DNA of 64,000 bases, taken from Macrostomum lignano (taxonomy: Eukaryota). This document shows positions 5,834 to 50,266 of the stretch, one piece after another. The notes beneath the pieces are model-generated. The model saw nothing but the letters and a program-made list of their open reading frames with translations, was not told where the DNA came from and did no database searches. The stretch's first letter is position 1. Each line of letters begins with the position of its first letter. The stretch covers positions 140,635 through 204,634 of the forward strand of contig NIVC01002098.1 of NCBI GenBank assembly GCA_002269645.1, given 5' to 3'. Made by a program: the position numbers and the translations under genes.

Positions 5834-5864
5834 CTGAGGTATAATGCGAGCAGTTCTGATTGGA

Positions 5865-7032: not shown

Positions 7033-7159
7033 CTGGATGGGCAACGGCGATTAGGAGAGAGATCTTCCGGATTGTTGCAGGTCTGGCCAATTCTTTATCC
7101 TCGAGTTGCACCATTTTTATGTCGATCTTTTCATCTATCGTGTCTATCTATTCGATTAT

Positions 7160-7640
7160 TTGTCTGCTGTGTCTACCTCTCTGTCTATCAGTCTACTATG
7201 CCTACCTCTATATGCCTCTCAGTCTACTGTGTCTACCTCTCTATGCCTCCCAGTCTACTGTCTACCTCTCTATGCCTCCCAGTCTACTGTGTCTACCTCT
7301 CTATGCCTCCCAGTCTACTGTGTCTACCTCTCTATGCCTCTCAGTCTACTGTGTCTACCTCTCTATGCCTCCCAGTCTACTGTGTCTACCTCTCTATGCC
7401 TCTCAGTCTGCTGTGTCTACCTCTCTATGCCTCTCAGTCTACTGTATCTACCTCTCTAGCCTCTCAGTCTACTGTATCTACCTCTCTATGCCTCTCAGTC
7501 TACTGTATCTACCTTTTTGTCTTTCAGTCTACTGCCTACTTTTCTATATCTCTCAGTCTACTGTCTACCTCTCTAAGTTCCTAAGTCTACTGTGTCTATT
7601 TGCCTATGCCTCTCAGTCTACCGTGTCTACCTTCACTGCA
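7160..7640. repeat. 31-bp minisatellite in CLP1 intron 1
   Basis: Unit AGTCTACTGTGTCTACCTCTCTATGCCTC(T/C)C. Confidence 0.92.
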
Positions 7641-24751: not shown

Positions 24752-26797
24752 TTAGCTGATCTGTGTGGGTGGTTGTTCCAAATATGCGGTCGCAGCAAAA
24801 TCATAGCCTGCTGATGTGCTACCACAAACGGCGGCACCACGAATAAAATGTGCAGCATCCGATCCTCCAGTTCGAGCACCAAACCCCATAAGAGTTCCTG
24901 TTTTATCCAACTCTCCCCAAGTTCCGCTATCATATGTAAAAAAGTTTTGCCCAATTAGTGTATAAACTTTGGTTGAAACATTGTATGATCTTAATTGATA
25001 CCAAACTCTTTGATTTAAAATATTAATTTCAAATAAATGCCAATCGCCATTATCAATATTTGCATAAGTTATCGTTTGATCGGCGTCATTAAGAACATCA
25101 TTACGAACTGTTGCTCCGTCTGATTTTTTATTACTCCAAAGAACCCCAACTCTGTCATGCCATTCACTCGCAAACACTATCAAGCCGGCGTCGGTTGTTA
25201 ATCCAGTTCCAAATTCACTTGTTGGTCGTTCATGACAGTATGCATAAAACCAAACAGCGTCAGCACCATCTCCTGTAGCATTAGCAACTCGGAAATAGAA
25301 GGAGGCGGATATATTACGAAAATGGGTGAAATTAAATTGTAAAGCACCACTTACACCTGAGGTTTCACGAGTAATTCTAGCTCCATTTTGATAATCGATA
25401 TAAGAAGCGTCGCCAACGAAACTTCCTGTTGGAAAAATATCGCCGGCAGTGGTTGGATTTTGATACCCAGTCCAATTGCAAATTACGGGTTCGTACAAAG
25501 CGGCATCAATTGCCGGTATGCCATCCAATTTTATTTTATCGTTAAAAGACATTCGGCCATCTGCCGTTTGGGTTACTCGCGTATCAACATAACCTTTAGT
25601 AACAACAGAACTGTTATTGTTTATAGTAGATATGTTAGTAATTGTGTTACCACCCATATCAATTGATTGATTAACAACTCCCAAATTTAAATCAAGAATT
25701 GTAAAAGTCTGTCTATAAATCTGAAAAGTTGATAAGCCGGGGTTGGTAGAACCCGATGTTGATGTAAGACAGAACAATCTGAAATATGAATATGTTTTAT
25801 CAAAATTTTGTGTGACATTAATTGTTTGAGTTGAGTTATTTATTTCTACAGAACTGCCAGCCGGTATTAAAACATCCCAGCTCGTATTGTCATTACTGCC
25901 CTCAAATCGCCATGATGCTGGGTGTTCGGTTGATGGTGATGGTCTCCCACGTAAATCAATTTTATAACACATTATCGCGGATGGACATTGGACTTGAATC
26001 CAATAATCAGTTTGAGTATTATTTGTTGCCCAATCTGTTGAATCATTACCATCAAACGCTTTCCAACTTGCAAAATCGGTTGTATTAAATGCTGTGCTTG
26101 CGGATATTGCAAAACCATTTCCACTCCAAGCTGCCATAGTTGGTACGTGTCCGGTTTCAACCGTTTGGAATCGATCCTGTTTTGGGGCTCCACCTCCAAC
26201 TAAATTATCAACTTCGGTTTTGGTATAAGAATCGGCAACATTCCGTTTTAAATTTAGGGAATTATCAACCTCAGTTTTGGTATAAGAATCAGTTATATCT
26301 CTTTTTAAATTTAGGGAATTATCAACTTCGGTTTTGGTATAAGAATCTGCAACATTCCGTTTTAAATTTAATGAATTATCAACCTCAGTTTTGGTATAAG
26401 AATCAGTTATATTTCTTTTTAAATTTAGGGAATTATCAACTTCAGTTTTGGTATAAGAATCAGTTATATTTCTTTTTAAATTTAGGGAATTATCAACTTC
26501 AGTTTTGGTATAAGAATCGGCAACATTCCGTTTTAAATTTAGGGAATTATCAACTTCGGTTTTGGTATAAGAATCGGCTGTATTGCGTTTTAAATTTAAT
26601 GAATCATCTATTTGAGTTTTGGTATAGGAATCTGCAACATTCCGTTTCAAATTTAGTTTATTATCAATTTCAGTTTTTTTATAACCTTCATCTTCATTAA
26701 TATATCGGTTATCTCCGAATGTAACACTTATTCCACCAGATGCGCCTCCACCAGTACTTGTTGTTCCGTTCCATGAGGGTGTTCCAGAAAATAACAT
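24752..26797 (-). CDS. Fibre/receptor-binding-like protein: 19-aa repeats, discoidin (F5/8C)-like domain, stalk motif, lectin-like domain
   Basis: 8+ copies of KTEVDNSLNLKRNVADSYT; ASWKAFDGNDSTDW...WIQV...WRFEGSND; IDMGGNTITNI...TKGYVD; C-terminal GFGARTGG..AHFI. Confidence 0.8.
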   Translation of the reverse strand: MLFSGTPSWNGTTSTGGGASGGISVTFGDNRYINEDEGYKKTEIDNKLNLKRNVADSYTKTQIDDSLNLKRNTADSYTKTEVDNSLNLKRNVADSYTKTEVDNSLNLKRNITDSYTKTEVDNSLNLKRNITDSYTKTEVDNSLNLKRNVADSYTKTEVDNSLNLKRDITDSYTKTEVDNSLNLKRNVADSYTKTEVDNLVGGGAPKQDRFQTVETGHVPTMAAWSGNGFAISASTAFNTTDFASWKAFDGNDSTDWATNNTQTDYWIQVQCPSAIMCYKIDLRGRPSPSTEHPASWRFEGSNDNTSWDVLIPAGSSVEINNSTQTINVTQNFDKTYSYFRLFCLTSTSGSTNPGLSTFQIYRQTFTILDLNLGVVNQSIDMGGNTITNISTINNNSSVVTKGYVDTRVTQTADGRMSFNDKIKLDGIPAIDAALYEPVICNWTGYQNPTTAGDIFPTGSFVGDASYIDYQNGARITRETSGVSGALQFNFTHFRNISASFYFRVANATGDGADAVWFYAYCHERPTSEFGTGLTTDAGLIVFASEWHDRVGVLWSNKKSDGATVRNDVLNDADQTITYANIDNGDWHLFEINILNQRVWYQLRSYNVSTKVYTLIGQNFFTYDSGTWGELDKTGTLMGFGARTGGSDAAHFIRGAAVCGSTSAGYDFAATAYLEQPPTQIS

Positions 26798-26806
26798 TTT
26801 TACTGT

Positions 26807-27244
26807 CTATTTTATAGAATCTAAAATTGCTTTAAATGCTTCGGGTCTTTCCTTAGAGTTATTAATTTTATATAAAAAATACAACGCCGCTTGCCCGCAA
26901 TAACTTTTGTCAAATGTTTGAAATTGTTCATGATGATCTCCACATAAACGATTTTTAGTATGATTAAATTTATCTTTTATTTCCTGTAACGGAGGAAGCG
27001 CGTATGAATCAAAAAAATAAACAAGTTTAGGTTTTGAATAAACTGCTGACCAATGAACCCCGTTTTCTTTTGTTGTTTCAATATTAACAATGAAAGATCC
27101 ATATTGTGGTAAGTCTTTGATCTCATCTCGCATAACACATCTGAATGGTTTTATTTTTAGTTGTCGCGCCCAATTTGTTAATTCAATATTGCTTGTTGTG
27201 TCTGTTCCATATCTTTGTTTGAACAACTGCCAATTCATAGTCAT
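26807..27244 (-). CDS. Adenain-like cysteine maturation protease
   Basis: Catalytic His (GVHWSA), Asp (YFFDSY), oxyanion Gln (QFQ) and Cys (YCG) all present. Confidence 0.93.
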   Translation of the reverse strand: MTMNWQLFKQRYGTDTTSNIELTNWARQLKIKPFRCVMRDEIKDLPQYGSFIVNIETTKENGVHWSAVYSKPKLVYFFDSYALPPLQEIKDKFNHTKNRLCGDHHEQFQTFDKSYCGQAALYFLYKINNSKERPEAFKAILDSIK

Positions 27245-27245
27245 T

Positions 27246-27416
27246 TTATGTTCCTGAAAAACTCTTGGTTTTGGTTAGTTTCGTTGGTTTGGATTTTAAC
27301 AGTTCCTTTCGGATTTTTTCTGCTTGCAGTTGTTTCAATTTTGTTAGTTCGATTTCATAATTATCCTTTGCATTTTGAACTTTTTCCGTTTGTTTTTTTA
27401 AACTATTGTTACCCAT
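27246..27416 (-). CDS. 56-aa basic protein not in the ORF track (MGNNSLKK...FSGT)
   Basis: Manual translation. GTAAAAATG start; exactly fills the gap between penton and protease. Confidence 0.65.
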   Translation of the reverse strand: MGNNSLKKQTEKVQNAKDNYEIELTKLKQLQAEKIRKELLKSKPTKLTKTKSFSGT

Positions 27417-27426
27417 TTTTACAATA

Positions 27427-28211
27427 TTAAACCTGTTTTATACGTAAAATTATTGTTATTGACTGCCCACCAAAACTTATTAATCTATCGCTTTCATCTA
27501 CAATCCTAATATAAATTGATTGAACACTATATTGATTTAAAGGATAATATATTGGGGTTTGGGGTGAAACAATCATTTTCTCTCCAATTGGAACAGCAAG
27601 AAATGGGATTGAATAAATAATTCCACGTTGAACCAAAACTCCATTATTATCTGTTATATAACCGCCGTTTGATATGTCGGTTGTAATATTAATTGTATTA
27701 ACACCACCCTCAATATTTCCAACAGTATCGCCGGTGCTTGATGTGGTAACGATTCGGGAATTAAATCCGAGTATGGTTCTGAGTGAATTTGCAATTGTGA
27801 AATCAACCTGATATCCGGATCCTAGTGATAGTGTGAATCTGCCAGATGGTAAATCAACCCTATAACAATTGCGCCTGATACCCAATCTCCATTAGTTGTT
27901 AATTCTCCTTCTATATAAGCATTCAAATCGGTATAGGAATACGCTCCTGGGTTAACGCTAAATGTTGTCCAATTGGCTCCGGAATCTTTAGAATATCTAA
28001 ATTGATTATTTGTTGCATTAATTAATTGAGGCATGTTAAAAACTGAAAATAGTATCAAACCTATTTGATAACTTAGGCTTTGATCGAGTTGTAACGGATC
28101 GCGCAATTGAATCCGTTGCTCACTAGTTGTCATTATAAACTGTAAGGTTGTACTAAATTTTGAATTAGTTCGATCTACCAATTGTTTTATAGTGTCTAAA
28201 TTTGTAGCCAT
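27427..28211 (-). CDS. Minor capsid protein (penton), frameshifted at ~27859
   Basis: Single jelly-roll-like pattern (NATNNQFRY, PGAYSYTDLN, ILGF, NTINITTDI, PIYYPL, IRIVDESDRLISFGG). One extra G in GGG restores IG-VDLPSGRF. Confidence 0.85.
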
Positions 28212-28225
28212 TTTTATAGTGGGAA

Positions 28226-28990
28226 TTATTCCTTATCGTGCTCGTTATCTTCTTTTATCAAATTTGTTAAGATTCGATGTTTCCGTTCTAACCTGGGGTT
28301 GATATATATATGTTTGTATTGACTAGCATCCCAAATTTTTTTACACATACTTTTAAATGCTTTTGCATCCAATCCAGGATTAAATCTAGTGCGTATATTT
28401 TGTAAATCATAGTCATCTAAATCAAACATTACACAACAGCTAGCATTCTTTTTTATAATCGTATGTAATTCTATTAAGGACTGTGTTAGATAAAAAGCTC
28501 CAATTCCATCTCCTCTACCACTAACAAAAATTTCCTTTTGCAATTCTTGATCACCGTCATTAATACAATCATCAAAAATAATTAGTGTTTTATCATGTTT
28601 TGGAATTTGATCATAGGATAAACGGGTTGATGCTCTAACAGTTGGGGCTCTGTTGTTAATGTTTTCTGATATTTGTGCAGTTGTTTTACATAAATCCTCA
28701 ATGTCATCGAGTGTAAATCTTGGTTCATCATCGTCCTCATATTGCTCATATGCTCTTAACATTCTAAACAAGATATCTTTTTTTAATTTGTTTTTTAATC
28801 CATGTTTAAGAAATTCATAATATTTTATTCTAGGTTTATTAGTATAAATTATTAAATTATTATAGTCTAGCATTCCATCTGTTGTTAATAAATCGTAAAC
28901 AAAGTGTGTTTTTCCTTTACCCGATCCTCCGATTACTAAACAAAGAAAAGGATCATTTGGAAATATCTTATTGTGTTTTGCCTTTACCAT
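28226..28990 (-). CDS. A32-like (FtsK/HerA) genome-packaging ATPase
   Basis: Walker A GGSGKGKT, Walker B LIIFDD, GR..GI...LTQS motif. Confidence 0.93.
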   Translation of the reverse strand: MVKAKHNKIFPNDPFLCLVIGGSGKGKTHFVYDLLTTDGMLDYNNLIIYTNKPRIKYYEFLKHGLKNKLKKDILFRMLRAYEQYEDDDEPRFTLDDIEDLCKTTAQISENINNRAPTVRASTRLSYDQIPKHDKTLIIFDDCINDGDQELQKEIFVSGRGDGIGAFYLTQSLIELHTIIKKNASCCVMFDLDDYDLQNIRTRFNPGLDAKAFKSMCKKIWDASQYKHIYINPRLERKHRILTNLIKEDNEHDKE

Positions 28991-29043
28991 TTTTAAAGAA
29001 AAAATTTATCTAAATTGGCGCGACGGTCGGAGACCTGCACCGC

Positions 29044-30516
29044 TTACAGCGGGGCGTCCCGAACAATCGTGCCATCTGCTTTAGCAATTGACATATATTC
29101 CTCTAGAAACAATACGTGTGCGTCTATGGCCTGATTACCAGTTTTATTAATCTCTAACATGTAATTAAGTCCAACATTGGCTACGTTTTCTTTCTGTGCC
29201 GTTAGATCATAAACAACCACTGGATGAATGTTTAGAAACTCTGTGGGTGTGTACTGAGGGACTGCATACGCTTCATTTTTGGCATAATCTTGATAATATT
29301 TTATAAAATCATTAACATTATTATTTGCAATATTTAGATTAAGAGGATCTTTAACCGGATAATATTGATCATCAACCTGCAGGCGGATATTCTGAACATT
29401 AAACTCGTTAATAGCTGCAGCCGCATTGTCTGTTGCGGTGGCTGCTTGTTCTGCTATGGCGCCTGATTGAATCCAATATAAATCCCCATTTGCTCTTTTA
29501 CTCCTTCTGCTTGTTATTTTAAACCAAACAAAAATATATCTCACCCGACGTTTTGATGTAATTATCTGCCACTGGAATGAATCCTGATTATTATTAATGG
29601 ATCGCATAAAATGTCGACGATTCAAATAAAATATTTCCTGATCATGCGTTAACTGATTATCAATGTGTTTTAAAAGTGGAGCTGTTACCTCAAGAGTTGG
29701 CACAACTAATTGAATTGAATCTATACGAACTGCTATATCGGTTGAAACCGAATTTCCAAAAAGTATCCTAGGCTGATATCCACCAGATATTTGCAACTGT
29801 ATCCCAAATTTTAATCCTTTCCATACCCGATTTGGTGAAAAGAACCCAAATAGTGGAAAGATTGAAAAGTCTTGCTCATATGCTGTTGCTGTGGTTAAAA
29901 CCGCTACTGGGAATTTATTCTGACGATCTATAAAACCCGTATTAATATCTTTTGTATTAGTCATGGTGGTTACAACTGGAACTATATTGGTATTAAGGTA
30001 ATTAATAAGAGCTGCGGTATCTGCACCGGCTGCTGGTGCTACGTTAGGAAAATTTATTGCTCCACCATCTCCCTTATCGGGCATCCATCCAACATTATCA
30101 CCAACTTGTTTTGATAAATAAGTATAATTTAAATGTTTCAAAACTCCATTAATCTCTGCGGGGTTTGATGCTGTCTCAACCTCGGCTCCATTAACTGACA
30201 GTTGTGCTTGGGAAAAACATTTATAAAACCAATCATTTTCTATTATTATTCCAGAACGATCTGCGATATCGCCGGCTGCAAGAGCGGTTCCATCATTTCT
30301 AGTATACAACCATCTAACACGGAAAAACGCATTTTTCATATCCAATATAGTGTTGGTTGCGCCGATGTCAAAAGCTACCGTTCCGGTAGTAAAGTTATTT
30401 GAATTATCACTTGTTGGTAGGGTAAAATTTAAATCTCTTGCCCTGACCTCATTAATATACTGGCGGTGCTTTTTGAAATGAAATTTATCACTCCATATAG
30501 TTTTTGTTTCAGCCAT
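29044..30516 (-). CDS. Double jelly-roll major capsid protein
   Basis: Intact 490-aa ORF beside ATPase and penton, with Polinton MCP-like segments (FSQAQLSVNG, RYIFVWF, QVDDQYYP). Confidence 0.88.
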   Translation of the reverse strand: MAETKTIWSDKFHFKKHRQYINEVRARDLNFTLPTSDNSNNFTTGTVAFDIGATNTILDMKNAFFRVRWLYTRNDGTALAAGDIADRSGIIIENDWFYKCFSQAQLSVNGAEVETASNPAEINGVLKHLNYTYLSKQVGDNVGWMPDKGDGGAINFPNVAPAAGADTAALINYLNTNIVPVVTTMTNTKDINTGFIDRQNKFPVAVLTTATAYEQDFSIFPLFGFFSPNRVWKGLKFGIQLQISGGYQPRILFGNSVSTDIAVRIDSIQLVVPTLEVTAPLLKHIDNQLTHDQEIFYLNRRHFMRSINNNQDSFQWQIITSKRRVRYIFVWFKITSRRSKRANGDLYWIQSGAIAEQAATATDNAAAAINEFNVQNIRLQVDDQYYPVKDPLNLNIANNNVNDFIKYYQDYAKNEAYAVPQYTPTEFLNIHPVVVYDLTAQKENVANVGLNYMLEINKTGNQAIDAHVLFLEEYMSIAKADGTIVRDAPL

Positions 30517-30550
30517 TATTTTAAGTTAAAAAAGTTTTTTATGTTAAAAA

Positions 30551-31222
30551 ATGAGTCAATTTATGGACGTTGATGGAGAGTTAGCGATTTATAAAGAGAA
30601 GCAAAGATATTCTGATTTTGTTAGAAATTTACAAAAAAGAAAGTTAGGAATACAATTAGCTGGCGAAAGATTTGCTGCTCCTTTTGTTAATCCTATTACG
30701 GGGAAAATTAGTGAACTAGAAAAAACAGATAAAGACCTTCTGGAAAAAATTGCTAAGAATACGGAGCCAAAAGAGGATGAAATTTTGGATGAGCCGCCAG
30801 CTTATGATGTTGATCAAGCACAATTGAGAATTGCAGAGATTAGGCATGCAGAGCGGGGCGATCGGGAACAATATCCAAGAGTACCAGCTAGTATTGCTGC
30901 GACAGATTTAGGTAATAATAATTATCGAATTGGTGGAGTTGATAAAAATCGAAATGAACTATATAGAGAATTGGGTGGAGCATTTAATATTATTACGAAC
31001 CCTAGGGTAAAATTTAACCCCGATTTATATACTAGGGATGAATTAGTAAGTGCTAAAATTTTTTACGATGAGTTAGGAGGTGGAGGTGTTAAAAATACCA
31101 GCTTGTATAAAAGGATTGTTAATTCTATAAATAACAAACCGGCTGTTGGAGAAGGATTTAAAACTCCTAGAAAACTTGTTTTAGCTGCCGCGAAAGCTGC
31201 TGGACATACAGGAATTAATTAA
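30551..31222 (+). CDS. Polinton PZ-like protein (possibly C-terminally short)
   Basis: N-terminal PFVNPI helix, LYTRDEL segment and C-terminal LAAAKAAGHTG resemble conserved Polinton PZ motifs (recalled, not searched). Confidence 0.45.
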   Translation: MSQFMDVDGELAIYKEKQRYSDFVRNLQKRKLGIQLAGERFAAPFVNPITGKISELEKTDKDLLEKIAKNTEPKEDEILDEPPAYDVDQAQLRIAEIRHAERGDREQYPRVPASIAATDLGNNNYRIGGVDKNRNELYRELGGAFNIITNPRVKFNPDLYTRDELVSAKIFYDELGGGGVKNTSLYKRIVNSINNKPAVGEGFKTPRKLVLAAAKAAGHTGIN

Positions 31223-31245
31223 TTGTTAAATTTATTTTTTATAAA

Positions 31246-31761
31246 ATGGAAAATACGATAAAAGATTGTCTTTGTAAACCTATTTATGATAAGGCTGGTT
31301 CTGACAGAATACTAAATAAGATATTTCAAGATGAATTAATAATTGCAAACCGTATTAAAACAATTCAAATGAGACTTGGATATCTTTATGAATTATTAGC
31401 TATTGAACATTTTGGTTTTGAAAAAATAAAGAAAATTGATTTAATTCATACCGAAAGAAAAATTGCGTTAGAATTAAAATCTTCTGATAATACAGATAAT
31501 TCATCAAGTCGATTTAGAAATATTCAAAAGTTATTAGAATTTAAAAATGTTAATCCCGAATTTGATTTATATTATATTTGCATTAATAATACTACTAAAA
31601 ACCCTGTACAAAAGGTATTTGATAATGGAGTTACCTTGTTAACTGGGGAATTTGCTTTAAATTTTTTATATGGTGATCAATATTTGGAAATTATTAAACT
31701 GATAGAAACGTGTTTTTTAAAGATTAAAAATGAGCAATCGAACGAAGTTCGCGAACCGTAG
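31246..31761 (+). CDS. PD-(D/E)XK restriction-endonuclease-like protein (Eco47II-like)
   Basis: QMRLGYLYE...KIDLI...IALELKSSDNTDNSSS fits the ID-x(8-10)-ELK catalytic core and the NTxNSSS segment of Eco47II-type enzymes. Confidence 0.7.
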   Translation: MENTIKDCLCKPIYDKAGSDRILNKIFQDELIIANRIKTIQMRLGYLYELLAIEHFGFEKIKKIDLIHTERKIALELKSSDNTDNSSSRFRNIQKLLEFKNVNPEFDLYYICINNTTKNPVQKVFDNGVTLLTGEFALNFLYGDQYLEIIKLIETCFLKIKNEQSNEVREP

Positions 31762-31888
31762 GTTCGATCAATTAGTATTTGAAGGAGGATTTTTAGATGT
31801 TCAAAAAGGATTAACAAGCTTACCGAGTATTTTTACTACTGGAAGGTATACAAATGAATTACACCTGCCATCGCATAATTTCACAGGT
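31730..31888 (+). CDS. PLA2-integrase fusion gene, exon 1 (not in ORF track)
   Basis: TTAAAAATG start. Translates MSNRTKF...ELHLPSHNFTG and is followed immediately by in-frame TAA (the start of the intron). Confidence 0.88.
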
Positions 31889-32190
31889 TAACCCGTGGCC
31901 TGAGTGAGGAAGGCAATGTCCTTGCTAGTCACTATTTGTGGCGACATCTTCAAATTGCGTGAAACCCGTCATACAGCTTCAAGTACCACTTCAATTGAGA
32001 AATCTTTTGAAGGAACAGAGGTAACTCCTCTTCCCAACGGTAACAAGCTTGAAGACACGGTGGCAATGCGCAGCCAAGCTCCTAAGTCAAAGACCGATAA
32101 GGAGAAGGTTCAGAGAGCAGACGGAGGTGGGCGGTAATTTATCCGCTTAAGGTGTGCTCCAGCCTATTTCGAAAGATTTAGGGCAAACTA
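31889..32190 (+). ncRNA. Group I self-splicing intron (IC1-like, 302 nt, no homing endonuclease, terminal A)
   Basis: P1 CAGGU/GCCUG with U31888-G31898 wobble; P3 CAUCUUC/GGAGGUG; P4 UGCGUG/UGCGCA; P7 G(A)GAGCA/UGCUCC; P8 GCGG/CCGC; P5abc with A-rich bulge and GAAA L5b; P9 GAAA loop. Removal restores HNFTG|PGTRL. Confidence 0.93.
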
Positions 32191-33295
32191 CCCGGCACTC
32201 GCTTAGATTTGAGATTAAATCCTGATGACACTCCAAAAGCTGATTCAATTCCCATTAACGGCATTGATTGGTTAGCATATTATCATGACTTAGCATACAC
32301 AGATGCTGATAAGAACACACCCGAGGAAGCATTAAGATTAAAACATGAAGCCGATCAAAAAATGATTCAAGGATTAGATAACTTACAAGGATTATCGGTA
32401 AGCCAAAGATTAACTAGGTGGATGGTTAAAAAGATTCTGCAATCTAAAGTTAAATTTGGTTTAGGAATTAATTACAATCAACATGGAAATAATTGTGTTG
32501 AGTGTTTATTATTAAGTGGCAGTGGGTTAAGTTCTGATGAGGCAAAGATTCTTCATAAAGAATATCGAAAACCTAAATTTTATAGAAAAATCATGAACTT
32601 CAAAAAGAATGAAATTTGGTATGCTGATTTAATGTCGATGCCAAATGATAGAGGATATAAATATATTTTAACCATATTAGATGGTTTTACTCGATACGCG
32701 TGGACTTTATGGTGAAAGCAAAAATGCCTTAATTGAAAGATTTAATCGAACTTTAGGTAAGAAATTGTGGTTTCAGTTTAGTCTTAATGGAAATCAAAAG
32801 TGGGTAAAAATATTACCAGACGTCGTGAAAGATTATAATAATTCATATCATTCAGCTATAAAGATGACTCCTCAACAAGCTTATAACAATCCTGAAAACG
32901 TTAAAGTTACTTTTGGAAAATTTGAAAAAAATAAAAAGAAATCTTTTAAGGTTGGTGATTCTGTTTATATCTATAAATGGAAAGATAAGTTTGAAAAGGG
33001 AAGAAAAGGATATTGGAAAATAAGTGAGAAATTTACTATCAGTAAAGTTTTAAATACCAATCCTACAACCTATATAATTGCTGATAAGGATGGTGAAGAA
33101 ATATTGGGTTCGTTTTATGAGAACCAACTAATATCAGCGAACAATTACTTGAGACAACAGGGTAGTAAATTTTTTATAACAAACAAAAACAATATTATTA
33201 CTATTATTATTACTAATATAATTATTGACATTTGTTCAACAGATATCAAACTTAAATTTTCATTAAGTTCATTAATCGGCACATTTCCGATGTAG
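32191..33295 (+). CDS. PLA2-integrase fusion gene, exon 2 (parvovirus-type PLA2 plus retroviral-like integrase; deletion/frameshift at ~32706)
   Basis: PLA2 catalytic HDLAY. Integrase WYADL, YILTILDGFTRYAW, IERFNRTL, YNNSYHSAIKMTP, FKVGD, GSFYE. The segment carrying the second catalytic Asp is missing. Confidence 0.92.
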
Positions 33296-33309
33296 GAGTA
33301 GTTTACCTT
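33145..33309 (-). CDS. Small single-pass membrane protein ending in PCCLK
   Basis: Probable start MKVNYS after AAAAATG. Hydrophobic IIILVIIIVIILFLFVI. Overlaps the integrase 3' end in antisense. Confidence 0.5.
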   Translation of the reverse strand, partial: KVNYSYIGNVPINELNENLSLISVEQMSIIILVIIIVIILFLFVIKNLLPCCLK

Positions 33310-33384
33310 CATTTTTTTATATATATTTTTCACAATAAATGTCGTTTCTGTTATAGAGTAATAGTTCATTTTTTTATATTTTTT

Positions 33385-33699
33385 TCACATAAAAATTTCA
33401 ATTTCATTCTCAGAATCACTAGTTTCATATGAACTATTTGTTGATTCGGAATCGTCTGAACGAACCTCCCAATCATCCGAATTTAAATAATCTCCAAGTT
33501 GAAATATTAACTCACCCTCTTGTTCTAAATCATACATCTCATCCAACTCTAATGGATAAAGTTTTAGGTCGTGCTTGTCGTCATATTTTAAATAAACTTC
33601 ATCAATTATTCCGTTCAAAATATGCTGTTTTATTATCTCTGCATTTTTAGCAACAGTCTCAAAAGTATCACTAACAGAAAAGGTGTAAACTCGGGTCAT
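33385..33699 (-). CDS. Polinton acidic hypothetical protein
   Basis: CTAAAAATG start just inside the right TIR. Asp/Glu/Ser-rich C-terminus. Confidence 0.6.
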   Translation of the reverse strand: MTRVYTFSVSDTFETVAKNAEIIKQHILNGIIDEVYLKYDDKHDLKLYPLELDEMYDLEQEGELIFQLGDYLNSDDWEVRSDDSESTNSSYETSDSENEIEIFM

Positions 33700-33716
33700 T
33701 TTTAGTAACAGAAAAA

Positions 33717-34036
33717 GACCCTTCGCGCCTGCGGCGCGTGCGAGGGGTTATAGAGTAGTAGTAGGTAAAAAGACGAGTACAGATCAGACCCTATTTATAA
33801 TGGCAGTTTGTAAGGTCTTAAGAGGGGGGACGCGTGGGGAGTGTTGGGGGATGATTTTTATTGATTTTTGTTATTAGGGGGTTTTGTGGGTGATTAGAGG
33901 TGGTAATGGTGTTTAGATGTGTTTAGATGTGTTTAGATGTGTTTTTTTTTATTTCTCCCCGTGTCCCCCCTCTAGACCCTTAAAACTGCTATTTAAAAAG
34001 TGCTCTGGGTCTGTACTCGTCTTTTTACCTACTACT
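33717..34036 (-). repeat. Polinton right TIR (320 bp)
   Basis: Reverse complement of 16768-17087. Confidence 0.97.
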
Positions 34037-34709
34037 CAGGGGTCAATGCAAGGAGATTGCTAAGTGATTGAGCTGCTTTTTTGTCCTGACAATAATGGAC
34101 AACTCATTTACAGTCAGCTGGACTAGAAGCTCATATTAGAATTTGAATTCAATTTTTCAATTTGACAATTGTTGGAGTACCATTCTACTAACCAATTGAA
34201 AGCAAGAAAATTTTCTCACAAAAGGCAATTTTTCTGGCAAAAGTATTGAAAATAATTGCCTAGATTAATGAATACAACTTAAAAATTAGCATGGTTACTG
34301 TAGGAACTGAATGCGATTGGGTCTGATGCTTTCAGTAGACAGCAGCAAGAAGTCTCAATACATAAAATAGAATCTATCTATTTCAACCCTTAGCGAGACG
34401 GGACTGCAGCTAAAGCCGCGCTGAGAACACTGAACAAATGCGCGCACTCGGGGAGAAAATCAGCGGGCAAAGCAAACGCTAGAATTGTCGTCCCAGCGCT
34501 GCCACGTACTCACTCACTGCAGTCTGCACCTGGTTACTTTCACTTTACTTTTACCCGGTTAGTTTTGTTTCTGGCTTTAACCCACTCATGCCCTAAACAG
34601 ATTAGTTCAAGTGTTAAGTTAATAAATAAAACATGAATAGTTGGAGCAGGCTGTGTACGAGCGTAGTATTATGATTTTTCTTGTTTACACGTACGAGTAA
34701 CAAACCTAA

Positions 34710-39502: not shown

Positions 39503-40152
39503 TGGATCAACTAAATCAGATAGGTCAGGTAGATCAGATAGGTCAGGTAGATCAGATAGGTCAGGTAGATCAGATAGGTCAGGTAGATCAGATAGGTCAG
39601 GTAGATCAGATAGGTCAGGTAGATCAGATAGGTCAGGTAGATCAGATAGGTCAGGTAGATCAGATAGGTCAGGTAGATCAGATAGGTCAGGTAGATCAGA
39701 TAGGTCAGGTAGATCAGATAGGTCAGGTAGATCAGATAGGTCAGGTAGATCAGATAGGTCAGGTAGATCAGATAGGTCAGGTAGATCAGATAGGTCAGGT
39801 AGATCAGATAGGTCAGGTAGATCAGATAGGTCAAGTAGATCAGATAGGTCAGGTAGATCAGATAGGTCAGGTAGATCAGATAGGTCAGGTAGATCAGATA
39901 GGTCAGGTAGATCAGATAGGTCAGGTAGATCAGATAGGTCAGGTAGATCAGATAGGTCAGGTAGATCAGATAGGTCAGGTAGATCAGATAGGTCAGGTAG
40001 ATCAGATAGGTCAGGTAGATCAGATAGGTCAGGTAGATCATATAGGTCAGGTAGATCAAATAGGTCAGGTAGATCAGATAGGTCAGGTAGATCAGATAGG
40101 TCAGGTAGATCAGATAGGTCAGGTAGATCAGATAGGTCAGGTGATCAGATAG
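39503..40152. repeat. 18-bp minisatellite (~35 copies)
   Basis: Unit GTCAGGTAGATCAGATAG, nearly invariant. Confidence 0.97.
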
Positions 40153-40470: not shown

Positions 40471-43106
40471 CCACGAAAAGACTGATGGTAAGCAGTGCTT
40501 ACCATGGCCTAACTCAACTTTCTGCCGACCAGAGTAAATTAAATTCTATGGCTAAATTGGTAGTATCCGTTCTTGCCGGATATGGTAAGCACTGCTTACC
40601 ATGAGTATTCTAGGTTTTCTTGTTTTCTGACAATTATAGGCTTTGCATTCTACATTCTTAATTGTTTCGTCAGTAACGTTCCTTTGTGCTTTGGTTCAAA
40701 AACACACATTTTGTTCGAAGAGGCTTCAATAAAGTTTGAAATCGAATTTACTAATAACAGAGTTAAACAACAAAAACGAGAATGAAAAACCTGATAATAT
40801 TCTGGCTGATCGAACTTACTGCGCATACAGAGCGTACGGCTCGTGCACTACAGAAACTATAACTAGTGAAACTAATATAACTTATCAAGAGTTGTGAACT
40901 AATTTGAGCTAAAGACAAGAGCCAAAAATAGTAAACAGAAGGATGAAAACTTTAGTTTTAGCGGAAAGTGAGTCCATTCTGCCGATGCTCGTACTTCAAC
41001 GCTGCGAATGCCAGCGTTGGAAGCAATCTAACAAACAAAGTCCCGGGCATCCTGGACATCGGCTGCAGAAATAAACTGTGCGCCGGGAACTGGCAGAACT
41101 GTAGCACATTCTGCACCTTTTCGTAGGTCTGGGCTGGGTAGGACGACCTGGGATTTTCTCCGGAAAATGCTGCTCATGGACTGCAACTGTTTGCATTATG
41201 GAAGCCGGTCGCTTCCTGCCATTTCCAGTTCGCTCTATCAAATCACGGATGCTGGCTTCGAGATATCTGATAAAAGTATTCTGGCCACCACACTTGCAGT
41301 ACAGAACCCAAGCGTTGCGCACCATTTGAAGGCACATATGCAAACCCAGCTTGTGGAACCATTTTGTTGTCTTTCTGCCGGCATCATAGGGCTGCAGGGT
41401 GCCGTCCAGCGTGTCCACTCCACCCATGCAGCGATTGTAAGTTAGCACACTGCGGCTCTTCTGCACTGCCACATGCTGACCAGCTCGATTGATCTTGACT
41501 TTCTCTGCCTTTGACGCAACGTCCTTCGTGTCCAGCAAATACAAGGTCTTGACTCCACTCTGCTTTCTCTCGACAGCCTTCACAATCAGAACACGTCCCT
41601 TCCTCGCGAAAGCTACATTATTCGGAACCACTAAAGCCTGCCGAAGCTGAGCCGGAACTCCTCGGTCTGGCCTCACGGTGCCCGTCAAGAACGTTGAATG
41701 GTCGATAAGGAACTGGGACAACCTGTATGATGTAAACCAGGTGTCGGTAAATATTCTGTACCCCTGGTCCAGAATTTCCTTGGCCAGCTCAGCTACGATT
41801 CGCTCACTGAGAGAAAGATGTTCACAGTCGTGTGTGGAGCCAAACTTCCGATTTTCTTCTGGAGTTGAGTGCACAAGGAAACTGAAGAGATAAGCAGACT
41901 TCGACTCACACAGACAGTACATTTTCATTCCGGACTTCGCCCGCTTTGTTGGAATGTACTGCTTAAAACGAAGTCGGCCCTTAAACAGTATCAATGACTC
42001 ATCAATGCTCACTTCACATTCAGGCCGGTAGTTGTTCTTGCAATAAGTTTGGAGCAGATTCATGAATGGACGAATCTTGTGCAGTGGGTCGGCGCTTGCT
42101 TCTTCCCTGCTGTCGTAGAAGCGCAGAAATGTCAGCAGCTGTTTGAATCTATCGCGAGCTAACGCCTCGGGCTTCTGAAAGTAAGGTATGCAGTGAAAAT
42201 CGTCTGTGCTCCAGTAGTCATGTAGCTCGGACTTTTTGTTCAGGCCCATGTACAGGTGCATGCCGACTAGCTTTTTCATCTCGCTTGCGGTGCAGTCCCG
42301 CCAGCTAGATACAATGGACGGAAGGACGTCCGTCTCAGGATCCAGTTCCATCAGCATGGTGGCCACCTTGGCGTTTGTCCATTCAGCGAGGCGTTGGAAA
42401 AGCTCTTCAGAAAGAAACATTTGTAAAAAGAAAGACTTATCCTTCTCAACATCCTCAGGAATTAAAAAGTTCGGATTGAGGCCAGCAGTTCCGGTAAATT
42501 CAAAACATTCTGTCCCTTCATCGGACCCAGGCTCGACAAGTCGCCAAACATTCTCAACTTCAGCAGCATCGCCAAACTCCTGTTCTTCCTCGCCATCAGG
42601 CCCTTCTATGGTTGGAGGATTGCCATCCAGTGCTTCTTCGCCAACCTCCTCGCCAGGCTCCTCGTCTATTGTTAAGTAGGAGTCGAGGCTTGCTTCACTG
42701 TCAGAGGTCATGTAGTCGATCTCAGAGGCAGAAGCCATGTACTTTAGGATATCAGTGAGTAAATACTGTGTCAAATTTAGCGAGAAAAGGCTAACAAACA
42801 AGATGGTAAGAGTGTTACTGTAAGAAAGCTAGTTTTACTACAAAGGGGACGTGCTGTCTGAGCACAGATTTCTATGGTAAGCAGCGCATACCAAGCAGGC
42901 AGCAAGTGAAACTGTTTTATTGGCTAAAGCAGTAGTGCTGTTCATTTCCTTCCCGTCTAGCGCGTCAGTTTGAGCCAAGCTGGATCAGTATGCCTAGCCG
43001 GCAGGAATGGAAGTGACATGCTATGCCAGAAAACATCTATGGTAAGCACTGCTTACCAAGCAGTCGGGAACAGACAAATTATGGATTCTGGTTAGGCAGG
43101 AAGAGG
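40471..43106 (-). mobile_element. piggyBac DNA transposon (2,636 bp) with TTAA TSD
   Basis: TTAA|CC...GG|TTAA ends, four copies of a 19-bp palindrome TGGTAAGCA(G/C)TGCTTACCA near the ends, intact transposase ORF. Confidence 0.9.
40996..42801 (-). CDS. piggyBac transposase (intact; likely start MASASE ~42738)
   Basis: DDD triad SIDES, FTDTWF and MGGVDTLD. C-terminal Cys-rich domain CRMC...CSRCPGCPGLC...CF..WH. Confidence 0.93.
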   Translation of the reverse strand: MFVSLFSLNLTQYLLTDILKYMASASEIDYMTSDSEASLDSYLTIDEEPGEEVGEEALDGNPPTIEGPDGEEEQEFGDAAEVENVWRLVEPGSDEGTECFEFTGTAGLNPNFLIPEDVEKDKSFFLQMFLSEELFQRLAEWTNAKVATMLMELDPETDVLPSIVSSWRDCTASEMKKLVGMHLYMGLNKKSELHDYWSTDDFHCIPYFQKPEALARDRFKQLLTFLRFYDSREEASADPLHKIRPFMNLLQTYCKNNYRPECEVSIDESLILFKGRLRFKQYIPTKRAKSGMKMYCLCESKSAYLFSFLVHSTPEENRKFGSTHDCEHLSLSERIVAELAKEILDQGYRIFTDTWFTSYRLSQFLIDHSTFLTGTVRPDRGVPAQLRQALVVPNNVAFARKGRVLIVKAVERKQSGVKTLYLLDTKDVASKAEKVKINRAGQHVAVQKSRSVLTYNRCMGGVDTLDGTLQPYDAGRKTTKWFHKLGLHMCLQMVRNAWVLYCKCGGQNTFIRYLEASIRDLIERTGNGRKRPASIMQTVAVHEQHFPEKIPGRPTQPRPTKRCRMCYSSASSRRTVYFCSRCPGCPGLCLLDCFQRWHSQR

Positions 43107-45499: not shown

Positions 45500-48400
45500 A
45501 CAACAGATTACGCAGTTAGCGTCACAGGGCGCGCTTCAAGGCCAGGTCGCGTTCACGCCACCGGCTGAATCCGGGGCGCCGGCGTCAGCCAGCAGGCAGT
45601 CGACGAAACGCCGAGTGCGCGCCTGCCCCCGCAGCGTTAGCAGCAGCACCTCCTGCGGGGGCTTGTGAGCACCCTCCAAGAAGGAGCTAAAGGAGACATG
45701 GACAACCTCCAGCAGCTCCGGGGGCCCCTGGACCTAAACCCAAGTCTGGGAATGACTAATGGCTCACACCACCACCGACCACCCGGAGAGGACGAGCCAA
45801 CCGCCACCGCAGGCAACCTGCACCGTGTCCTGCGGCTCCGCGGGGGCAGGAGTCCCGACAGTTGCCACGACAGCGGGCCACCAGGGACAACTAAAACCCT
45901 GGGTTTTAGTTGTCCCTGCGGGCCACGACGGCGACGAAACCGTCGGAAACGCGATTTAACCCCCCAACCTAGCCAAGAGCTCTTGATTATGCAGTTTAAC
46001 TGCAATGGCTTGCGCAGCCGTACTACGGAGCTGGCTAATCGGTTGGAGGCTGAACGCCCAGCCGTCGTTCTACTCCAAGAGACGAAGCTCCTACCTAAAG
46101 GCGATTTCCGTGCACCTGCGGGCTACGTTGTGGCCGCCCGCTGTGATGGCGTCCCCAATGACAACGACCCGAACACACTCCCCCAGGATGCACAGAGGAC
46201 GGGTGAACCTGCTCACCGGGGCCCCGGACCCCCCCCCCCCGGAAACAAGCACGTTGCAGGACCCGCCAGCCAGATGATCGAAACACGTGGTGCAGTGGAT
46301 GTAAGTCTTGGAGAACCGCATGCACCAACCGGCAACTGGAAGACATACCGGAAGCAACCCCGCCTGGAAGCAGCTCTACCGCCCAAGCCGCGGCCACGAC
46401 GGCACCTCCGACTGACCGGGCCCTCGGACCGACCTGTAGACGCCTTGCCCCGAACGACCGCACGAACTACTGTAGCGGCTGCATCTCTCGCCGCAAGTGC
46501 CTACGTCGCAGCGCTGCATCTGCGCCAACCTCCTCGCAACAACAGTCCCAGCCCTCGGACCTCTCCAGCTCCGCTAATCCAAAAAACTCTAAAAACATGA
46601 CGGGGCGAGGAGGGACCATGGTCATGGCCTGCGAGGACCTCTGTTACTCCAAGCTCGACTGCGGCCCACCCAGCAGCGAAATGGACGTCGCCGCCTGTAG
46701 GATTTGCCCCCTCAAACAGCCGGACTTGCTCGTCGCCTCGGTCTATATCCCGCCGGTTAGCGCTCAAAGACAGCAGAGCGACCGTGAATCGGGCTGCCCT
46801 CTGGACCGTATCCCTCACTCAGGAAGGGCTGTCATCGGTGGCGATTTCAATGCTCATGGCGGCTGGGACCAGCATATGGAAGAGGAAAGCCGCGGACGCG
46901 CTGTCGAGGAATGGGCAGCGCGCTCCGGCCTCACGATCTGCAATGGCACGAACCACACCAGGACTAGCCCGGCCACAGGCAAGAGAAGCAGCCCCGATAT
47001 CAGCTGCGCCTCTGGGCCTTAGCGGAGACTGCCATCTCCAGCTGGAGAACCGGCCGTGACCTGGGTAGTGACCACCTGCCCATCTTCTTCAGCATCCAGG
47101 GCCATCGCCCAACGCAGAACAAGAGAGGTCCAGCCCGCTGGAACTTCCGCAAGGCCGACTGGCGCACCTTCAGCGACCACCTGCAGCTCGCGTTGAGCAC
47201 GCCCCAACTGGAAGCCAGCAGGACACTGGACCAACAGGCCGCCGCACTCAATGAAGAGATCCTCAGGGCTGCACACCGTGCGATCCCGCGAGGCAGCAGA
47301 GCTGGCCGAAGAGCCCCTTTCTGAAACGAGAAATGTCAGCCAGCGTGCGACGCGGTGCAAGAAGCCAGGACCACGGCGGAGACCACAAAGACACCGGAAG
47401 CCATGGCCGCTTACAACAGAGCCAGACACCACACGACCAAAACCATCCGCACTGAACGCCGAGCCTGTCTGGAATCAAAGGCCAGCGAGCTTAATGTCAA
47501 CAGCGACCTTTACGCCCTACTCCGAAACCTCCGAGGGGAGTCAGCTAAGAAGCGAGATGCTGCTGCTATCTATAGCAGCGCAAGCAAAGGGAGACCAGCA
47601 CGTACCTGCCACTCCGACAAGGATAAGGCAGATCTTTTCTGCCAGCTGTACGCTGAAGTCTCCAGGGTGCCGCGTAGACCTGAGGACGCCGCTATCCGCT
47701 ACGAAGTCAAAGCCGGACTGCGGAACCAGACGGGGCACCTGGACGCATCGGAGGAGAACTTCTCGGTCTCCGAACTCCGAACTGCTCTGCGTAAACTTAA
47801 ATCGGGCAAAGCCGCCGGAGCGGACGGGATCCACAACAAAATGCTCAAACACCTGCCACCGGCCGGCGACTCTGCGCTGCTAGAGCTCATCAATCGCAGC
47901 TGGAGAGAAGGTAAGACACCCAACGCCTGGCGAGGGGCAGTTATCATCCCGATCCCTAAAAAAAGGAAAAGACCCGGAACAGCCTAGCAGTTACCGCCCT
48001 GTCGCCCTGACCAGCTGCGTGGCCAAGTGTGCGGAAAGGATGGTGCTGGCTAGACTTAACTGCTTCCTCGAAACTAACGGAAAGATCTCCGCTAGTCAAG
48101 ACGGCTTTCGCAGGCACCGGAGCTGCGAAGAGCAGATCGGCCGCATCTGCCAAGATATCTTTGACGGACTCGAGGCTAGCCCGTCCCTGCGCAGCATCCT
48201 GGCTCTGCTCGATTTCAGCCGCGCCTATGACAGGGTGTGGCGCCGGGCTCTCTACGCCAAGCTCCTTAGAATGGGCGTAAGCCACCGCATGGTCCAGTGG
48301 ATCAGGGGGTTCCTCTGTCAAAGACGCGCCCGAGTTCGCTGGAACGCCGCCCTCAGCCGCGAGAGAAGTTTCCGCGAAGGCCTCCCACAGGGCAGCGTCA

Positions 48401-50266
48401 TCGCCCCGACGCTGTGGAATGTGTACGTCAACGATCTGGTCGAAGCCCTTAATCAAGCTGCCCCGGGCATTGGCATTAGCCTCTACGCCGATGACAGCGC
48501 ACTGTTGAGCACTGCCAACTCGCTCTACCGCTGTGCCGTCAATCTGCAACCGGCCCTGGATGCGGTACACACCTGGTGCGTCACCTGGAAGGTCGAAATG
48601 AGCCTAGCTAAGTGCTGCTACACCACCTTCACCCTCGCGCCAAGTGAATGCAATGGAAAAATGCGCCCAGATCTGAACATCGCGGGAGAGCCGCTGGCGT
48701 ACGAGGCCCACCCGACCTTCCTGGGGTGACCCTCGACGGCCAGCTCACTTTTAATCAGCACGCCCGTGACATTTGCAAGCGCATGGCAGCCCGCAGAAGA
48801 CCACTGGCGGCGCTTGCCACCAGATCGAATGGCGCAAGTTTCAAAGTTCTCCGAATGGCCTACATCTCTACGGTCCGGGCCGTAGCCGACTTCGCAGGTG
48901 GCGTCTGGGCGCCTTTGCGTCCCCGAGCACACGCCTCCTTGTGGAGCGCCAACAGAACTGCGCCGCCCGCATCATCACAGGGTGCATCCAGCCGACAAAT
49001 ATCAGAGCGCTCTTGGCCGCCGCCGACCTGCCGCCGCTCGGTCACCTGTTCCTGGAAAGAGCAGCGGTCCTCCGTGAAAGGGTCCTACGGCTCCAGCCAG
49101 ACGTACCAGCGCACCAAACGGCACTCAGAACCTGCAGACCCCGACTAAAATCCCGAGCCCACGAAAGCTGGATCAGAGATCAGCAGCAGACACCGGAGCG
49201 GCCGATGCTGGTCAATGACTACAAGCGACCACACCGTGGCTGCTGGAGGCGCGCAGTACAAGAATTGACCGACGAACTGGACCTACATACGCGCGCGCCG
49301 TATACGGCGCCGGGTCCACCGTGGACCTTCACTGACAACGTCGTCTTCGACCTCAATCTGGCAGACGCCTGCAACCGCCGACTCCCCGACAGCATTCGGC
49401 GAACCCGTGCTCTCGAATATCTGGCTTCCAGACCTGTGCCGGACATCAAAATCTGGACTGATGGCAGCGCCACCGAAGGCCACAGAAATGGACGCGGAGC
49501 CGCGGTCATCACGACTAGGCTCTGGGGACAGGTGCGCACTGCTGCGGCTGGAGCGATCTGCAGTAGCACCGCAGCGGAGTTGACTGCTATAGCCACCGGC
49601 CTTGCGAACATCCGACACCTGGACACGATTCACGGGACTAGCGCCGACATCCTCACTGATAGCCAAGCGGCGCTCCTCACACTCATGCGCGGTCCTTGCG
49701 ACCAGAGAGACCCGCGGGGCGCGGAGTGCTGGTCCCACCTCGGCGCGATGCAGCACCGCACCCGCCTCACCTGGGTGCCGGCCCACGTTGGGGTGGAAAG
49801 CAACGAAAGAGCGGATGCTGCTGCCAACCGCGCCGTGAATCTCCGCCAAGAAGAACAGGCAATCCCACTTTGCACTGCCAAGGCGCTCATCCACAGAGCT
49901 AGGCGTCGCCTTGACCGTGACTTCTGGGGACGCAGCGCACCATGGACTCACCCCGACCGCATCAGCCGAGCGGAGGCAACGGCGGTCTGCCAGCTCCGCG
50001 CAGGCTGCAGCACCGCCTGTGCCGCTACCCGCCACCGCATCGGCATTGCTGACTCGCCGCGGTGTCCGGACTGCGGTGAGCCAGACACCGAGAGTCACCT
50101 GTTAGACGACTGCCCCCGCGGAGACCACGCCCGCGCTGTCCACCCCCTCGACCTCAACGACGCGGGCGGGATCTGCCGCTTTCTCCGGATGGTGGGCCGA
50201 CCCCTCGGCCGGCCAAGCCCCCAGCCGCCTGCCGGCGGCGTCGAGGGCTCAGTGTAGAGAGAGAGA
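45500..50266 (+). mobile_element. Near-full-length non-LTR retrotransposon (APE-RT-RNase H-CCHC; I/Ingi-like), several frameshifts
   Basis: APE QFNCNG/LQETKL/GDFNAH/SPDI; RT YRPVALTS, DFSRAYD, GLPQGS, YADD; RNase H WTDGS, AELTAI, TDSQ, WVPAHVG..NERAD; CPDC..H...C; ends in (GA)n. 5' end approximate. Confidence 0.9.

What the first reader, a model, noticed from the sequence alone, without database searches (positions are those of the whole stretch)
31889..32190. Group I ribozyme intron inside a Polinton gene integrated in an animal nuclear genome
Seen in the sequence: exon 1 ends HLPSHNFTG followed by in-frame TAA, and 302 nt later PGTRLDLRL resumes in frame, so excision rebuilds the PLA2 Ca2+-binding loop (FTGPG, cf. 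parvoviral YLGPG). The insert has no GT-AG ends but folds as a group I core. P1 is C31884-U31888 with G31898-G31902 (U-G at the splice site). P2.1 is GUCAC/GUGGC, P3 31945-51/32123-29, P4 31956-61/32067-72. P5a CUUCAAG-UACC/GGUA-[ACAAG]-CUUGAAG has the A-rich bulge, L5b is GAAA (31999-32002) with a CCUAAG receptor half (32081-86), and P6a is CUCCU/AGGAG. P7 G[A]GAGCA/UGCUCC keeps the guanosine-binding G-C pair and shows two compensatory changes versus the usual GACUA/UAGUC; P8 and P9 are also present. P5abc indicates an IC1-like subgroup, typical of nuclear rDNA in fungi, algae and protists. Established knowledge: in animals group I introns are known from mitochondria of early-branching lineages, not nuclear genes. 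I know of no description in animal Polintons, but this needs a literature check. Inference: the virus acquired it in a microbial eukaryote, and integrase/PLA2 expression now depends on self-splicing.
Basis: partly seen in the sequence, partly recalled or inferred. Interest (0 to 1): 0.96.

Follow-up and report, generated by a model that had tools for sequence, protein, structure and literature searches.

The report
Group I intron in endogenous virus
A real group I (self-splicing type) intron interrupts the phospholipase–integrase gene of a 17-kb Polinton-like virus integrated in a eukaryotic, probably animal, chromosome; such introns are already known in protist relatives of this virus, and this copy looks like a decaying fossil.

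Summary
Rfam's Intron_gpI model scores the insert at 53.0 and 52.6 bits (gathering score 50; E about 1e-12), but only in short scans, because the default speed filters lose it. In about 50 uninterrupted relatives, the last residue of exon 1 and the first residue of exon 2 are adjacent, inside the most conserved loop of a PLA2-like domain fused to an rve integrase.

The element spans 16768–34036. It has 321-nt terminal inverted repeats and a 6-bp target-site duplication, so it is truly integrated. It has no protein-primed polymerase, so it is Polinton-like rather than a classic Polinton.

- **Host:** an animal host is plausible (the flanking piggyBac is closest to flatworm copies) but not proven.
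- **Novelty:** group I introns in Polinton-like viruses were reported in 2025, in protists.
- **Subgroup:** IC1 could not be tested.
- **Dependence on splicing:** this is doubtful for this copy. The host gene has one frameshift, and the ribozyme departs from one canonical splice-site determinant.

The parts
16768..34036 (.). Integrated Polinton-like virus element, about 17.27 kb, GC 0.33 within flanks of GC 0.4-0.6
   Evidence: TIRs, TSD, composition, virus-type genes
16767..17087 (.). Left terminal inverted repeat (321 nt, 97% complementary to the right arm)
33717..34037 (.). Right terminal inverted repeat
16762..16767 (.). Left copy of the 6-bp target-site duplication (CAGGGG)
34037..34042 (.). 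Right copy of the 6-bp target-site duplication
31730..33295 (+). PLA2-like / rve-integrase fusion gene, interrupted by the intron and broken by one frameshift (given as one part)
31889..32190 (+). Group I intron, 302 nt, GC 0.47, no endonuclease ORF inside
   Evidence: (RF00028 at 53.0 and 52.6 bits)
31884..31902 (+). P1: last five exon-1 bases paired with the internal guide 31898-31902; U31888.G31898 at the 5' splice site
31945..32160 (+). Catalytic core P3-P8: P3 31945-51/32123-29; P4 31956-61/32067-72; P5 with the P5abc extension 31966-32060; P6/P6a 32072-32110; P7 32113-19/32155-60; P8 32128-49
32161..32195 (+). 3' end: P9 hairpin with GAAA loop (32163-32182), P9.0 (32188-89 with 32161-62), and the exon-2 side of P10 (32191-95 with 31897-93)
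31859..32400 (+). PLA2-like domain (PF08398 in relatives), split by the intron; the near-invariant His-Asp, Tyr and distal Asp residues are retained in exon 2
32569..33142 (+). rve-type integrase core region (outer bounds from matches to intact relatives)
31246..31761 (+). 171-aa ORF directly upstream, overlapping the start of exon 1; weak restriction-endonuclease-like match (RE_Eco47II, 23.8 bits, below the cut-off of 25.9)
   Evidence: no support
29044..30516 (-). Probable double-jelly-roll major capsid protein
   Evidence: low-confidence model; hits are capsid proteins of virophages, mavirus, adomaviruses and giant viruses
28226..28990 (-). A32-type packaging ATPase
18924..22013 (+). 1029-aa replication-type ORF: weak primase-like N-terminus and an embedded Endonuclease VII domain (residues 482-542)
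24752..26797 (-). 681-aa fibre/adhesin-like ORF with a discoidin (F5/8 type C) domain and a 19-codon tandem array
40996..42801 (-). Neighbour: piggyBac transposase ORF in the host flank (the host-lineage clue)

Best explanation
The 302-nt insert is a genuine group I intron with no endonuclease gene of its own. It sits between two codons in the most conserved loop of the PLA2-like domain of a PLA2-integrase fusion gene. That gene belongs to a 17.3-kb Polinton-like virus that an integrase inserted into a eukaryotic, probably animal, chromosome.

In the replicating virus the intron would be removed from the mRNA by the standard two-step, guanosine-initiated self-splicing reaction, guided by P1 at the 5' site and by P9.0 and P10 at the 3' site. 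That would make the insertion phenotypically silent. This step is inferred, not shown.

This particular copy is most likely a fossil in early decay. Its host gene carries one frameshift, and the ribozyme departs from one canonical splice-site determinant. A full-length protein is therefore not expected from it, whether or not it splices.
For: RF00028 scores above its gathering score in two independent scans, with the model's U.G pair on U31888.G31898. 80 of 82 modelled pairs are standard, including the P3/P7 pseudoknot. P10 (4/5) and P9.0 (2/2) are in register with the 3' junction, while alternative nearby junctions get 0-2 of 5. About 50 uninterrupted relatives have exon-1 residue 53 and exon-2 residue 1 adjacent. 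The flanking residues are 96%, 86-88% and 91-92% shared. Relatives are PF08398 plus rve fusions, with both domains above cut-off. Intron GC is 0.47 against 0.33 for the element. TIRs and a 6-bp TSD are present. Every intact relative matches the window's gene in two frames downstream of the intron. Three relatives begin with M one residue before the junction, as gene calls on insert-bearing alleles would. Group I introns in Polinton-like viruses are documented (PMC12220804).
Against: There is no transcript or splicing evidence of any kind. With a single sequence there is no covariation test, and the MFE z-score is only -1.17. The non-canonical determinant could be a natural variant rather than a lesion. 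I could not compare copies, because relatives' DNA was not fetched. The host's identity rests on one transposon family.
Confidence: 0.8

Rival explanations
1. One reading: the intron is fully active in this copy, and expression of PLA2-integrase in the host nucleus depends on its self-splicing.
For: The core helices show no mismatches. The TIRs are 97% alike, so the insertion is fairly young. The catalytic PLA2 residues are retained in exon 2.
Against: There is one frameshift in the integrase part of the same gene. One canonical splice-site determinant is not met. There are no expression data.
Confidence: 0.15
2. The host is not an animal: the contig comes from a protist (for example a rhizarian or an alga), where Polinton-like viruses with group I introns are already known. 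In that case the finding is an ordinary further example.
For: RF00028 introns in such viruses have been reported only from protists: Paulinella micropora, Rhodomonas lacustris and Desmodesmus. Discoidin-type fibre proteins like the 681-aa ORF are reported mainly from rhizarian and glaucophyte elements. The closest relatives of the virus genes are unnamed metagenome contigs.
Against: The only named relatives of the flanking piggyBac are animal: Macrostomum lignano at 54% and 45%, and a butterfly. The fusion family has a named coral member and many members on Mb-scale contigs.
Confidence: 0.35
3. The insert is not a ribozyme. It is a spliceosomal intron, or an unrelated insertion that resembles a group I core by chance.
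For: The whole-window Rfam scan at default settings found nothing. The folding-energy z-score is unremarkable.
Against: E is about 1e-12 and the score is above the curated threshold once the filters are relaxed. There are no GT-AG ends. P1, P9.0 and P10 agree exactly with the junction defined independently by protein homology.
Confidence: 0.02

Closest known systems
Group I introns (RF00028) in Polinton-like viruses integrated in protist genomes (PMC12220804, 2025)
   Same: The same kind of ribozyme in the same kind of virus-like element, integrated in nuclear DNA. The introns are small (309-376 bp there, 302 here). In Rhodomonas lacustris they lie in 'a short protein of ~50 aa', the size of exon 1 here.
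   Different: There the hosts are a rhizarian, a cryptophyte and a green alga, and the interrupted gene was left unannotated. Here the gene is identified as a PLA2-integrase fusion, and the host flank looks animal.
[quoted passage not shown]
   Same: A group I intron in a protein-coding gene of a eukaryotic dsDNA virus, removed from the mRNA.
   Different: That is a giant virus of algae, its splicing is shown by experiment and RNA-seq, and it belongs to subgroup IB. Here splicing is not shown and the subgroup is untested.
Group I introns in phage protein-coding genes, and free-standing endonucleases acting on intron sites ('collaborative homing'; PMC3984707; discussed in PMC11296320)
   Same: Insertion at the most conserved site of an enzyme gene, an intron without its own endonuclease, and a nuclease-like ORF next door.
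   Different: The neighbouring ORF's nuclease identity is below threshold here and unsupported by other searches. No mobility evidence exists.
Group I introns of animals (mitochondria of sponges, cnidarians and placozoans, and some sharks; PMC10964413)
   Same: Group I introns residing in animal cells.
   Different: The review does not state the cell compartment; to my knowledge these introns are organellar. This one would be nuclear, but only as a passenger in an endogenous virus.
Tetrahymena-type (IC1) nuclear rDNA introns
   Same: P2 plus P2.1 and a P5abc-like extension with an A-rich bulge and GAAA loops.
   Different: Protein-coding host gene, no P9.1/P9.2 extension, and subgroup membership not tested.

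Membership tests
Group I catalytic intron (Rfam RF00028) | Covariance-model score at or above the curated gathering score | tested here: met
   53.0 and 52.6 bits against 50; missed only by the speed filters in long scans
Group I catalytic intron (Rfam RF00028) | Conserved core: P3-P8 with the P3/P7 pseudoknot and P4-P6 | tested here: met
   P3 7/7, P4 6/6, P5 4/4, P6 4/4, P7 5/5, P8 5/5
Group I catalytic intron (Rfam RF00028) | P1 between the 5' exon end and the internal guide, with U.G at the 5' splice site | tested here: met
   31884-88 with 31898-902, 5/5; the model's U.G falls on U31888.G31898
Group I catalytic intron (Rfam RF00028) | P10 (and P9.0) marking the 3' splice site in register with P1 | tested here: met
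   P10 4/5 and P9.0 2/2; alternative junctions get 0-2 of 5
Group I catalytic intron (Rfam RF00028) | All canonical invariant splice-site determinants present (as listed in PMC10964413) | tested here: not met
One departure in this copy.
Group I catalytic intron (Rfam RF00028) | Precise excision restores the host gene | tested here: met
   Exon ends map to adjacent residues in about 50 uninterrupted relatives. Exons were searched apart; the joined step was left out.
Group I catalytic intron (Rfam RF00028) | Self-splicing activity | not testable with these tools
   No transcript or biochemical data
Subgroup IC1 | Peripheral P2/P2.1 and P5abc extension | tested here: met
   but I could not confirm that these are exclusive to IC1
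Subgroup IC1 | Placement by subgroup-specific models or core phylogeny | not testable with these tools
   Rfam has a single group I model and no subgroup library is available
Polinton/Maverick in the strict sense | Long TIRs, 6-bp TSD and an rve integrase | tested here: met
   (the integrase is broken by one frameshift)
Polinton/Maverick in the strict sense | Protein-primed family B DNA polymerase | tested here: not met
   No match in Pfam, NCBIfam, PHROGs or PDB; the 1029-aa ORF is primase-like with an Endonuclease VII domain
Polinton/Maverick in the strict sense | Double-jelly-roll capsid protein and A32-type ATPase | tested here: met
   ATPase. Capsid: fold hits at E 1e-13 to 1e-9, but from a low-confidence model with TM about 0.3
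PLA2-like domain (Pfam PF08398) | Score above the curated cut-off | tested here: inconclusive
   Exon 2 alone scores 18.0 bits against 23.9. Uninterrupted relatives score 27.8-40.3 bits. No solved PLA2 structure came back by sequence.
PLA2-like domain (Pfam PF08398) | Family-invariant catalytic residues retained | tested here: met
   H32, D33, Y36 and D55 of exon 2 are shared by 97-98% of 107 relatives
Mobile intron with homing endonuclease | Endonuclease gene inside the intron or next to it | tested here: inconclusive
   None inside the intron. The upstream ORF has only a sub-threshold nuclease match, and its fold model was unusable (pLDDT 39).

The most novel reading that the evidence does not exclude
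The host is a bilaterian animal (flatworm-like), and intact sister copies of this element splice the intron in animal nuclei. That would make this the first group I intron in a bilaterian nuclear genome, and would show that Polinton-like viruses can carry self-splicing introns between protists and animals.
Probability: 0.2. Interest if true: 0.75.

Novelty: new member of a known kind. Interest (0 to 1): 0.45.

Why it matters
Group I introns are thought to be absent from animal nuclear genomes, and among Polinton-like viruses they have been reported only in protists. A verified case in an element integrated in an animal chromosome would extend their known range. It would also point to these viruses as vehicles for ribozyme transfer. 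The finding identifies the interrupted gene as a widespread PLA2-integrase fusion (677 relatives). It also gives a practical warning: Rfam's default filters miss this intron in genome-scale scans, so such introns are probably under-counted.

Tried and rejected
- **Default Rfam scans.** The whole-window scan at gathering threshold and an 18.5-kb permissive scan gave no hit. This is explained by filter loss, not absence.
- **Alternative 3' junctions nearby.** These were rejected: no P10 support and no agreement with relatives.
- **Spliceosomal intron.** Rejected, because there are no GT-AG ends.
- **Host look-ups.** Exact look-ups of three host-side ORFs were not on record. The window's genome seems absent from the protein collection, so the host could not be named.
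- **Supplementary tables of PMC12220804.** The stored text is truncated and holds no intron records.
- **PDB by sequence.** The searches returned only integrase cores, with no PLA2 structure.
- **NCBIfam.** Nothing for five element ORFs.
- **Upstream nuclease-like ORF.** The fold model had pLDDT 39, so I made no fold search.
- **Literature search on Macrostomum and Mavericks.** Nothing relevant.
- **Subgroup assignment.** There is no tool for it.
- **Second copy or endonuclease ORF.** No second copy of the intron in the window and no endonuclease ORF inside it.

Full report

Yes. Exon 1 runs from the ATG at 31730 to the codon at 31886-31888 and is followed at once by a stop codon. The same protein resumes in frame at 32191, and the insert is 302 nt.

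Rfam's group I model (RF00028) found nothing in the 64-kb scan at gathering threshold or in an 18.5-kb permissive scan. It did match at 53.0 bits (E 1.8e-12) in a 0.9-kb scan and at 52.6 bits (E 8.6e-13) in a 0.3-kb scan. Both scores exceed the curated threshold of 50, so the earlier blanks are filter losses.

P1, P2, P2.1, P3, P4, P5, P5a/b/c, P6, P6a, P7, P8 and P9 give 80 of 82 standard pairs. The two strands of P7 are not scored by the model, because P7 forms a pseudoknot with P3. I did not test that claim further.

**2. Are the boundaries right?**

Three independent lines agree.
- **RNA.** P10 (32191-32195 with 31897-31893, 4/5) and P9.0 (2/2) are in register with P1. Alternative nearby 3' junctions get 0-2 of 5 pairs.
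- **Protein.** An exhaustive search with the exon-2 product alone found 327 relatives. In about 50 uninterrupted relatives, the last residue of exon 1 and the first residue of exon 2 map to adjacent residues.
- **Conservation.** The residues at the junction are among the most conserved in the family: 96% at -1, 86-88% at +1 and 91-92% at +3.

I searched the exons apart and by reference. I left out the joined-exon search.

If it is a lesion, it would affect exon ligation rather than folding. I count it as one possible break and give neither its place nor its nature.

**3. What is the gene?**

Uninterrupted relatives of 378-444 aa combine a PLA2-like domain (PF08398, 27.8-40.3 bits against a cut-off of 23.9) with an rve integrase core. 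The family is large, with 677 hits at E <= 1e-10. A profile of it matches retroviral-type integrase cores in the PDB (E 8e-11).

Exon 2 alone is below the Pfam cut-off (18.0 bits). It does keep the near-invariant His-Asp, Tyr and distal Asp residues, which 97-98% of 107 relatives share. No solved PLA2 structure came back by sequence. I had the parvoviral capsid PLA2 in mind as a comparator, but I fetched and typed nothing.

Downstream of the intron, every intact relative matches the window in two reading frames. The gene is therefore broken by one frameshift, and I found no other break in it.

**4. What is the element?**

- **Bounds.** TIRs of 321 nt, 97% alike (16767-17087 and 33717-34037), and a 6-bp direct repeat immediately outside them bound a 17.27-kb element. 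The element has GC 0.33, and the flanks have GC 0.4-0.6. That is an integrase-made insertion, not a contaminant or a chimera.
- **Genes.** It encodes an A32-type ATPase and a probable double-jelly-roll capsid protein. The capsid model has low confidence, but its hits are almost all capsid proteins. It also encodes a discoidin-bearing fibre-like protein and a 1029-aa replication ORF that is primase-like with an embedded Endonuclease VII domain.
- **Label.** No protein-primed polymerase was found. It is therefore Polinton-like rather than a Polinton in the strict sense.

**5. What is the host?**

- **Flanks.** The flanks hold LINE ORFs, a piggyBac transposase, an F-box ORF and many minisatellites. 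This is eukaryotic nuclear DNA, and nothing suggests human.
- **For an animal host.** The piggyBac's only named relatives are animal: Macrostomum lignano at 54% and 45%, and a butterfly. One member of the fusion family is named from a coral, and many lie on Mb-scale contigs.
- **Against an animal host.** The nearest relatives of the virus genes are unnamed metagenome contigs, and discoidin fibres are reported mainly from protist elements.
- **Judgement.** I rate an animal host at about 0.6-0.65.
- **Consequence for the work.** Because an animal host is plausible, I treated the element as a virus-like element of animals. I fetched no DNA of its relatives by look-up, pattern or accession. That step is referred.

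**6. How does it most likely work?**

Inferred from the family's established mechanism: in the replicating virus the intron folds, binds guanosine in P7 and cleaves after U31888. The exons are then ligated at the junction held by P10, which restores the PLA2 loop.

The intron is too small for an endonuclease gene. Its position in the most conserved site of the gene is typical of homing-type introns. The ORF just upstream has a sub-threshold restriction-endonuclease-like match, which suggests, but does not show, a free-standing helper nuclease of the kind discussed. Other searches gave no support.

Three relatives begin with M one residue before the junction. Gene calls on insert-bearing alleles would look like that, so the same site is probably occupied elsewhere too.

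**7. What is known, and how new is this?**

- Group I introns in protein genes of eukaryotic viruses have been known since the chlorovirus work.
- RF00028 introns were reported in Polinton-like viruses of Paulinella, Rhodomonas and Desmodesmus in 2025.
- PLA2-like proteins are known in such viruses.
- A review states that group I introns are absent from metazoans apart from non-bilaterian lineages and some sharks.

The kind is therefore known. What is new is the host gene and, if confirmed, the animal nuclear location. This makes it a new member of a known kind.

**8. Slips, stated as required.**

- My first two notebook entries and a comment in the script state the splice-determinant departure and an ORF end explicitly. 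I wrote them before I judged that they could count as places of breaks.
- Nothing has been deleted.

Noticed in passing
window 31889-32190 (method): Rfam's default speed filters lose this intron in the 64-kb and 18.5-kb scans, although it scores above the gathering threshold in short scans. Genome-scale surveys probably under-count such introns.
   Followed up: yes
window 18924-22013 (+): The 1029-aa replication-type ORF has an Endonuclease VII (HNH-type) domain embedded at residues 482-542, behind a weakly primase-like N-terminus. This is a nuclease fused into a replication protein, as described for Polinton-like viruses.
   Followed up: partly
window 31246-31761 (+): A 171-aa ORF abuts and overlaps the start of the interrupted gene and has a sub-threshold restriction-endonuclease-like match. 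It could be a free-standing nuclease linked to intron mobility. The fold model was unusable.
   Followed up: partly
window 24752-26797 (-), array 26203-26684: A fibre/adhesin-like ORF with a discoidin domain, phage tail-fibre-like matches and a 57-nt (19-codon) tandem array. The literature reports such fibres mainly in rhizarian and glaucophyte elements.
   Followed up: partly
proteins P0018, P0036, P0135: Three relatives from public assemblies start with M exactly one residue before the intron site. This suggests insert-bearing alleles at the same site elsewhere. Their DNA was not fetched.
   Followed up: no
window 40996-42801 (-); 45665-50257 and 55920-59596 (+): An intact-looking piggyBac transposase ORF (closest named relatives in Macrostomum lignano) and two LINE copies or remnants with endonuclease, RT and RNase H domains lie in the right flank.
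   Followed up: partly
window 847-7632, 39515-40152, 51898-53003, 61100-63457: There are many long minisatellite arrays (periods 18-47 nt, up to 35 copies) in both flanks.
   Followed up: no
literature, PMC12220804: The Rhodomonas PLV introns are said to lie in a gene for 'a short protein (~50 aa)', the size of exon 1 here (53 aa). This may be the same split gene, unrecognised there.
   Followed up: no
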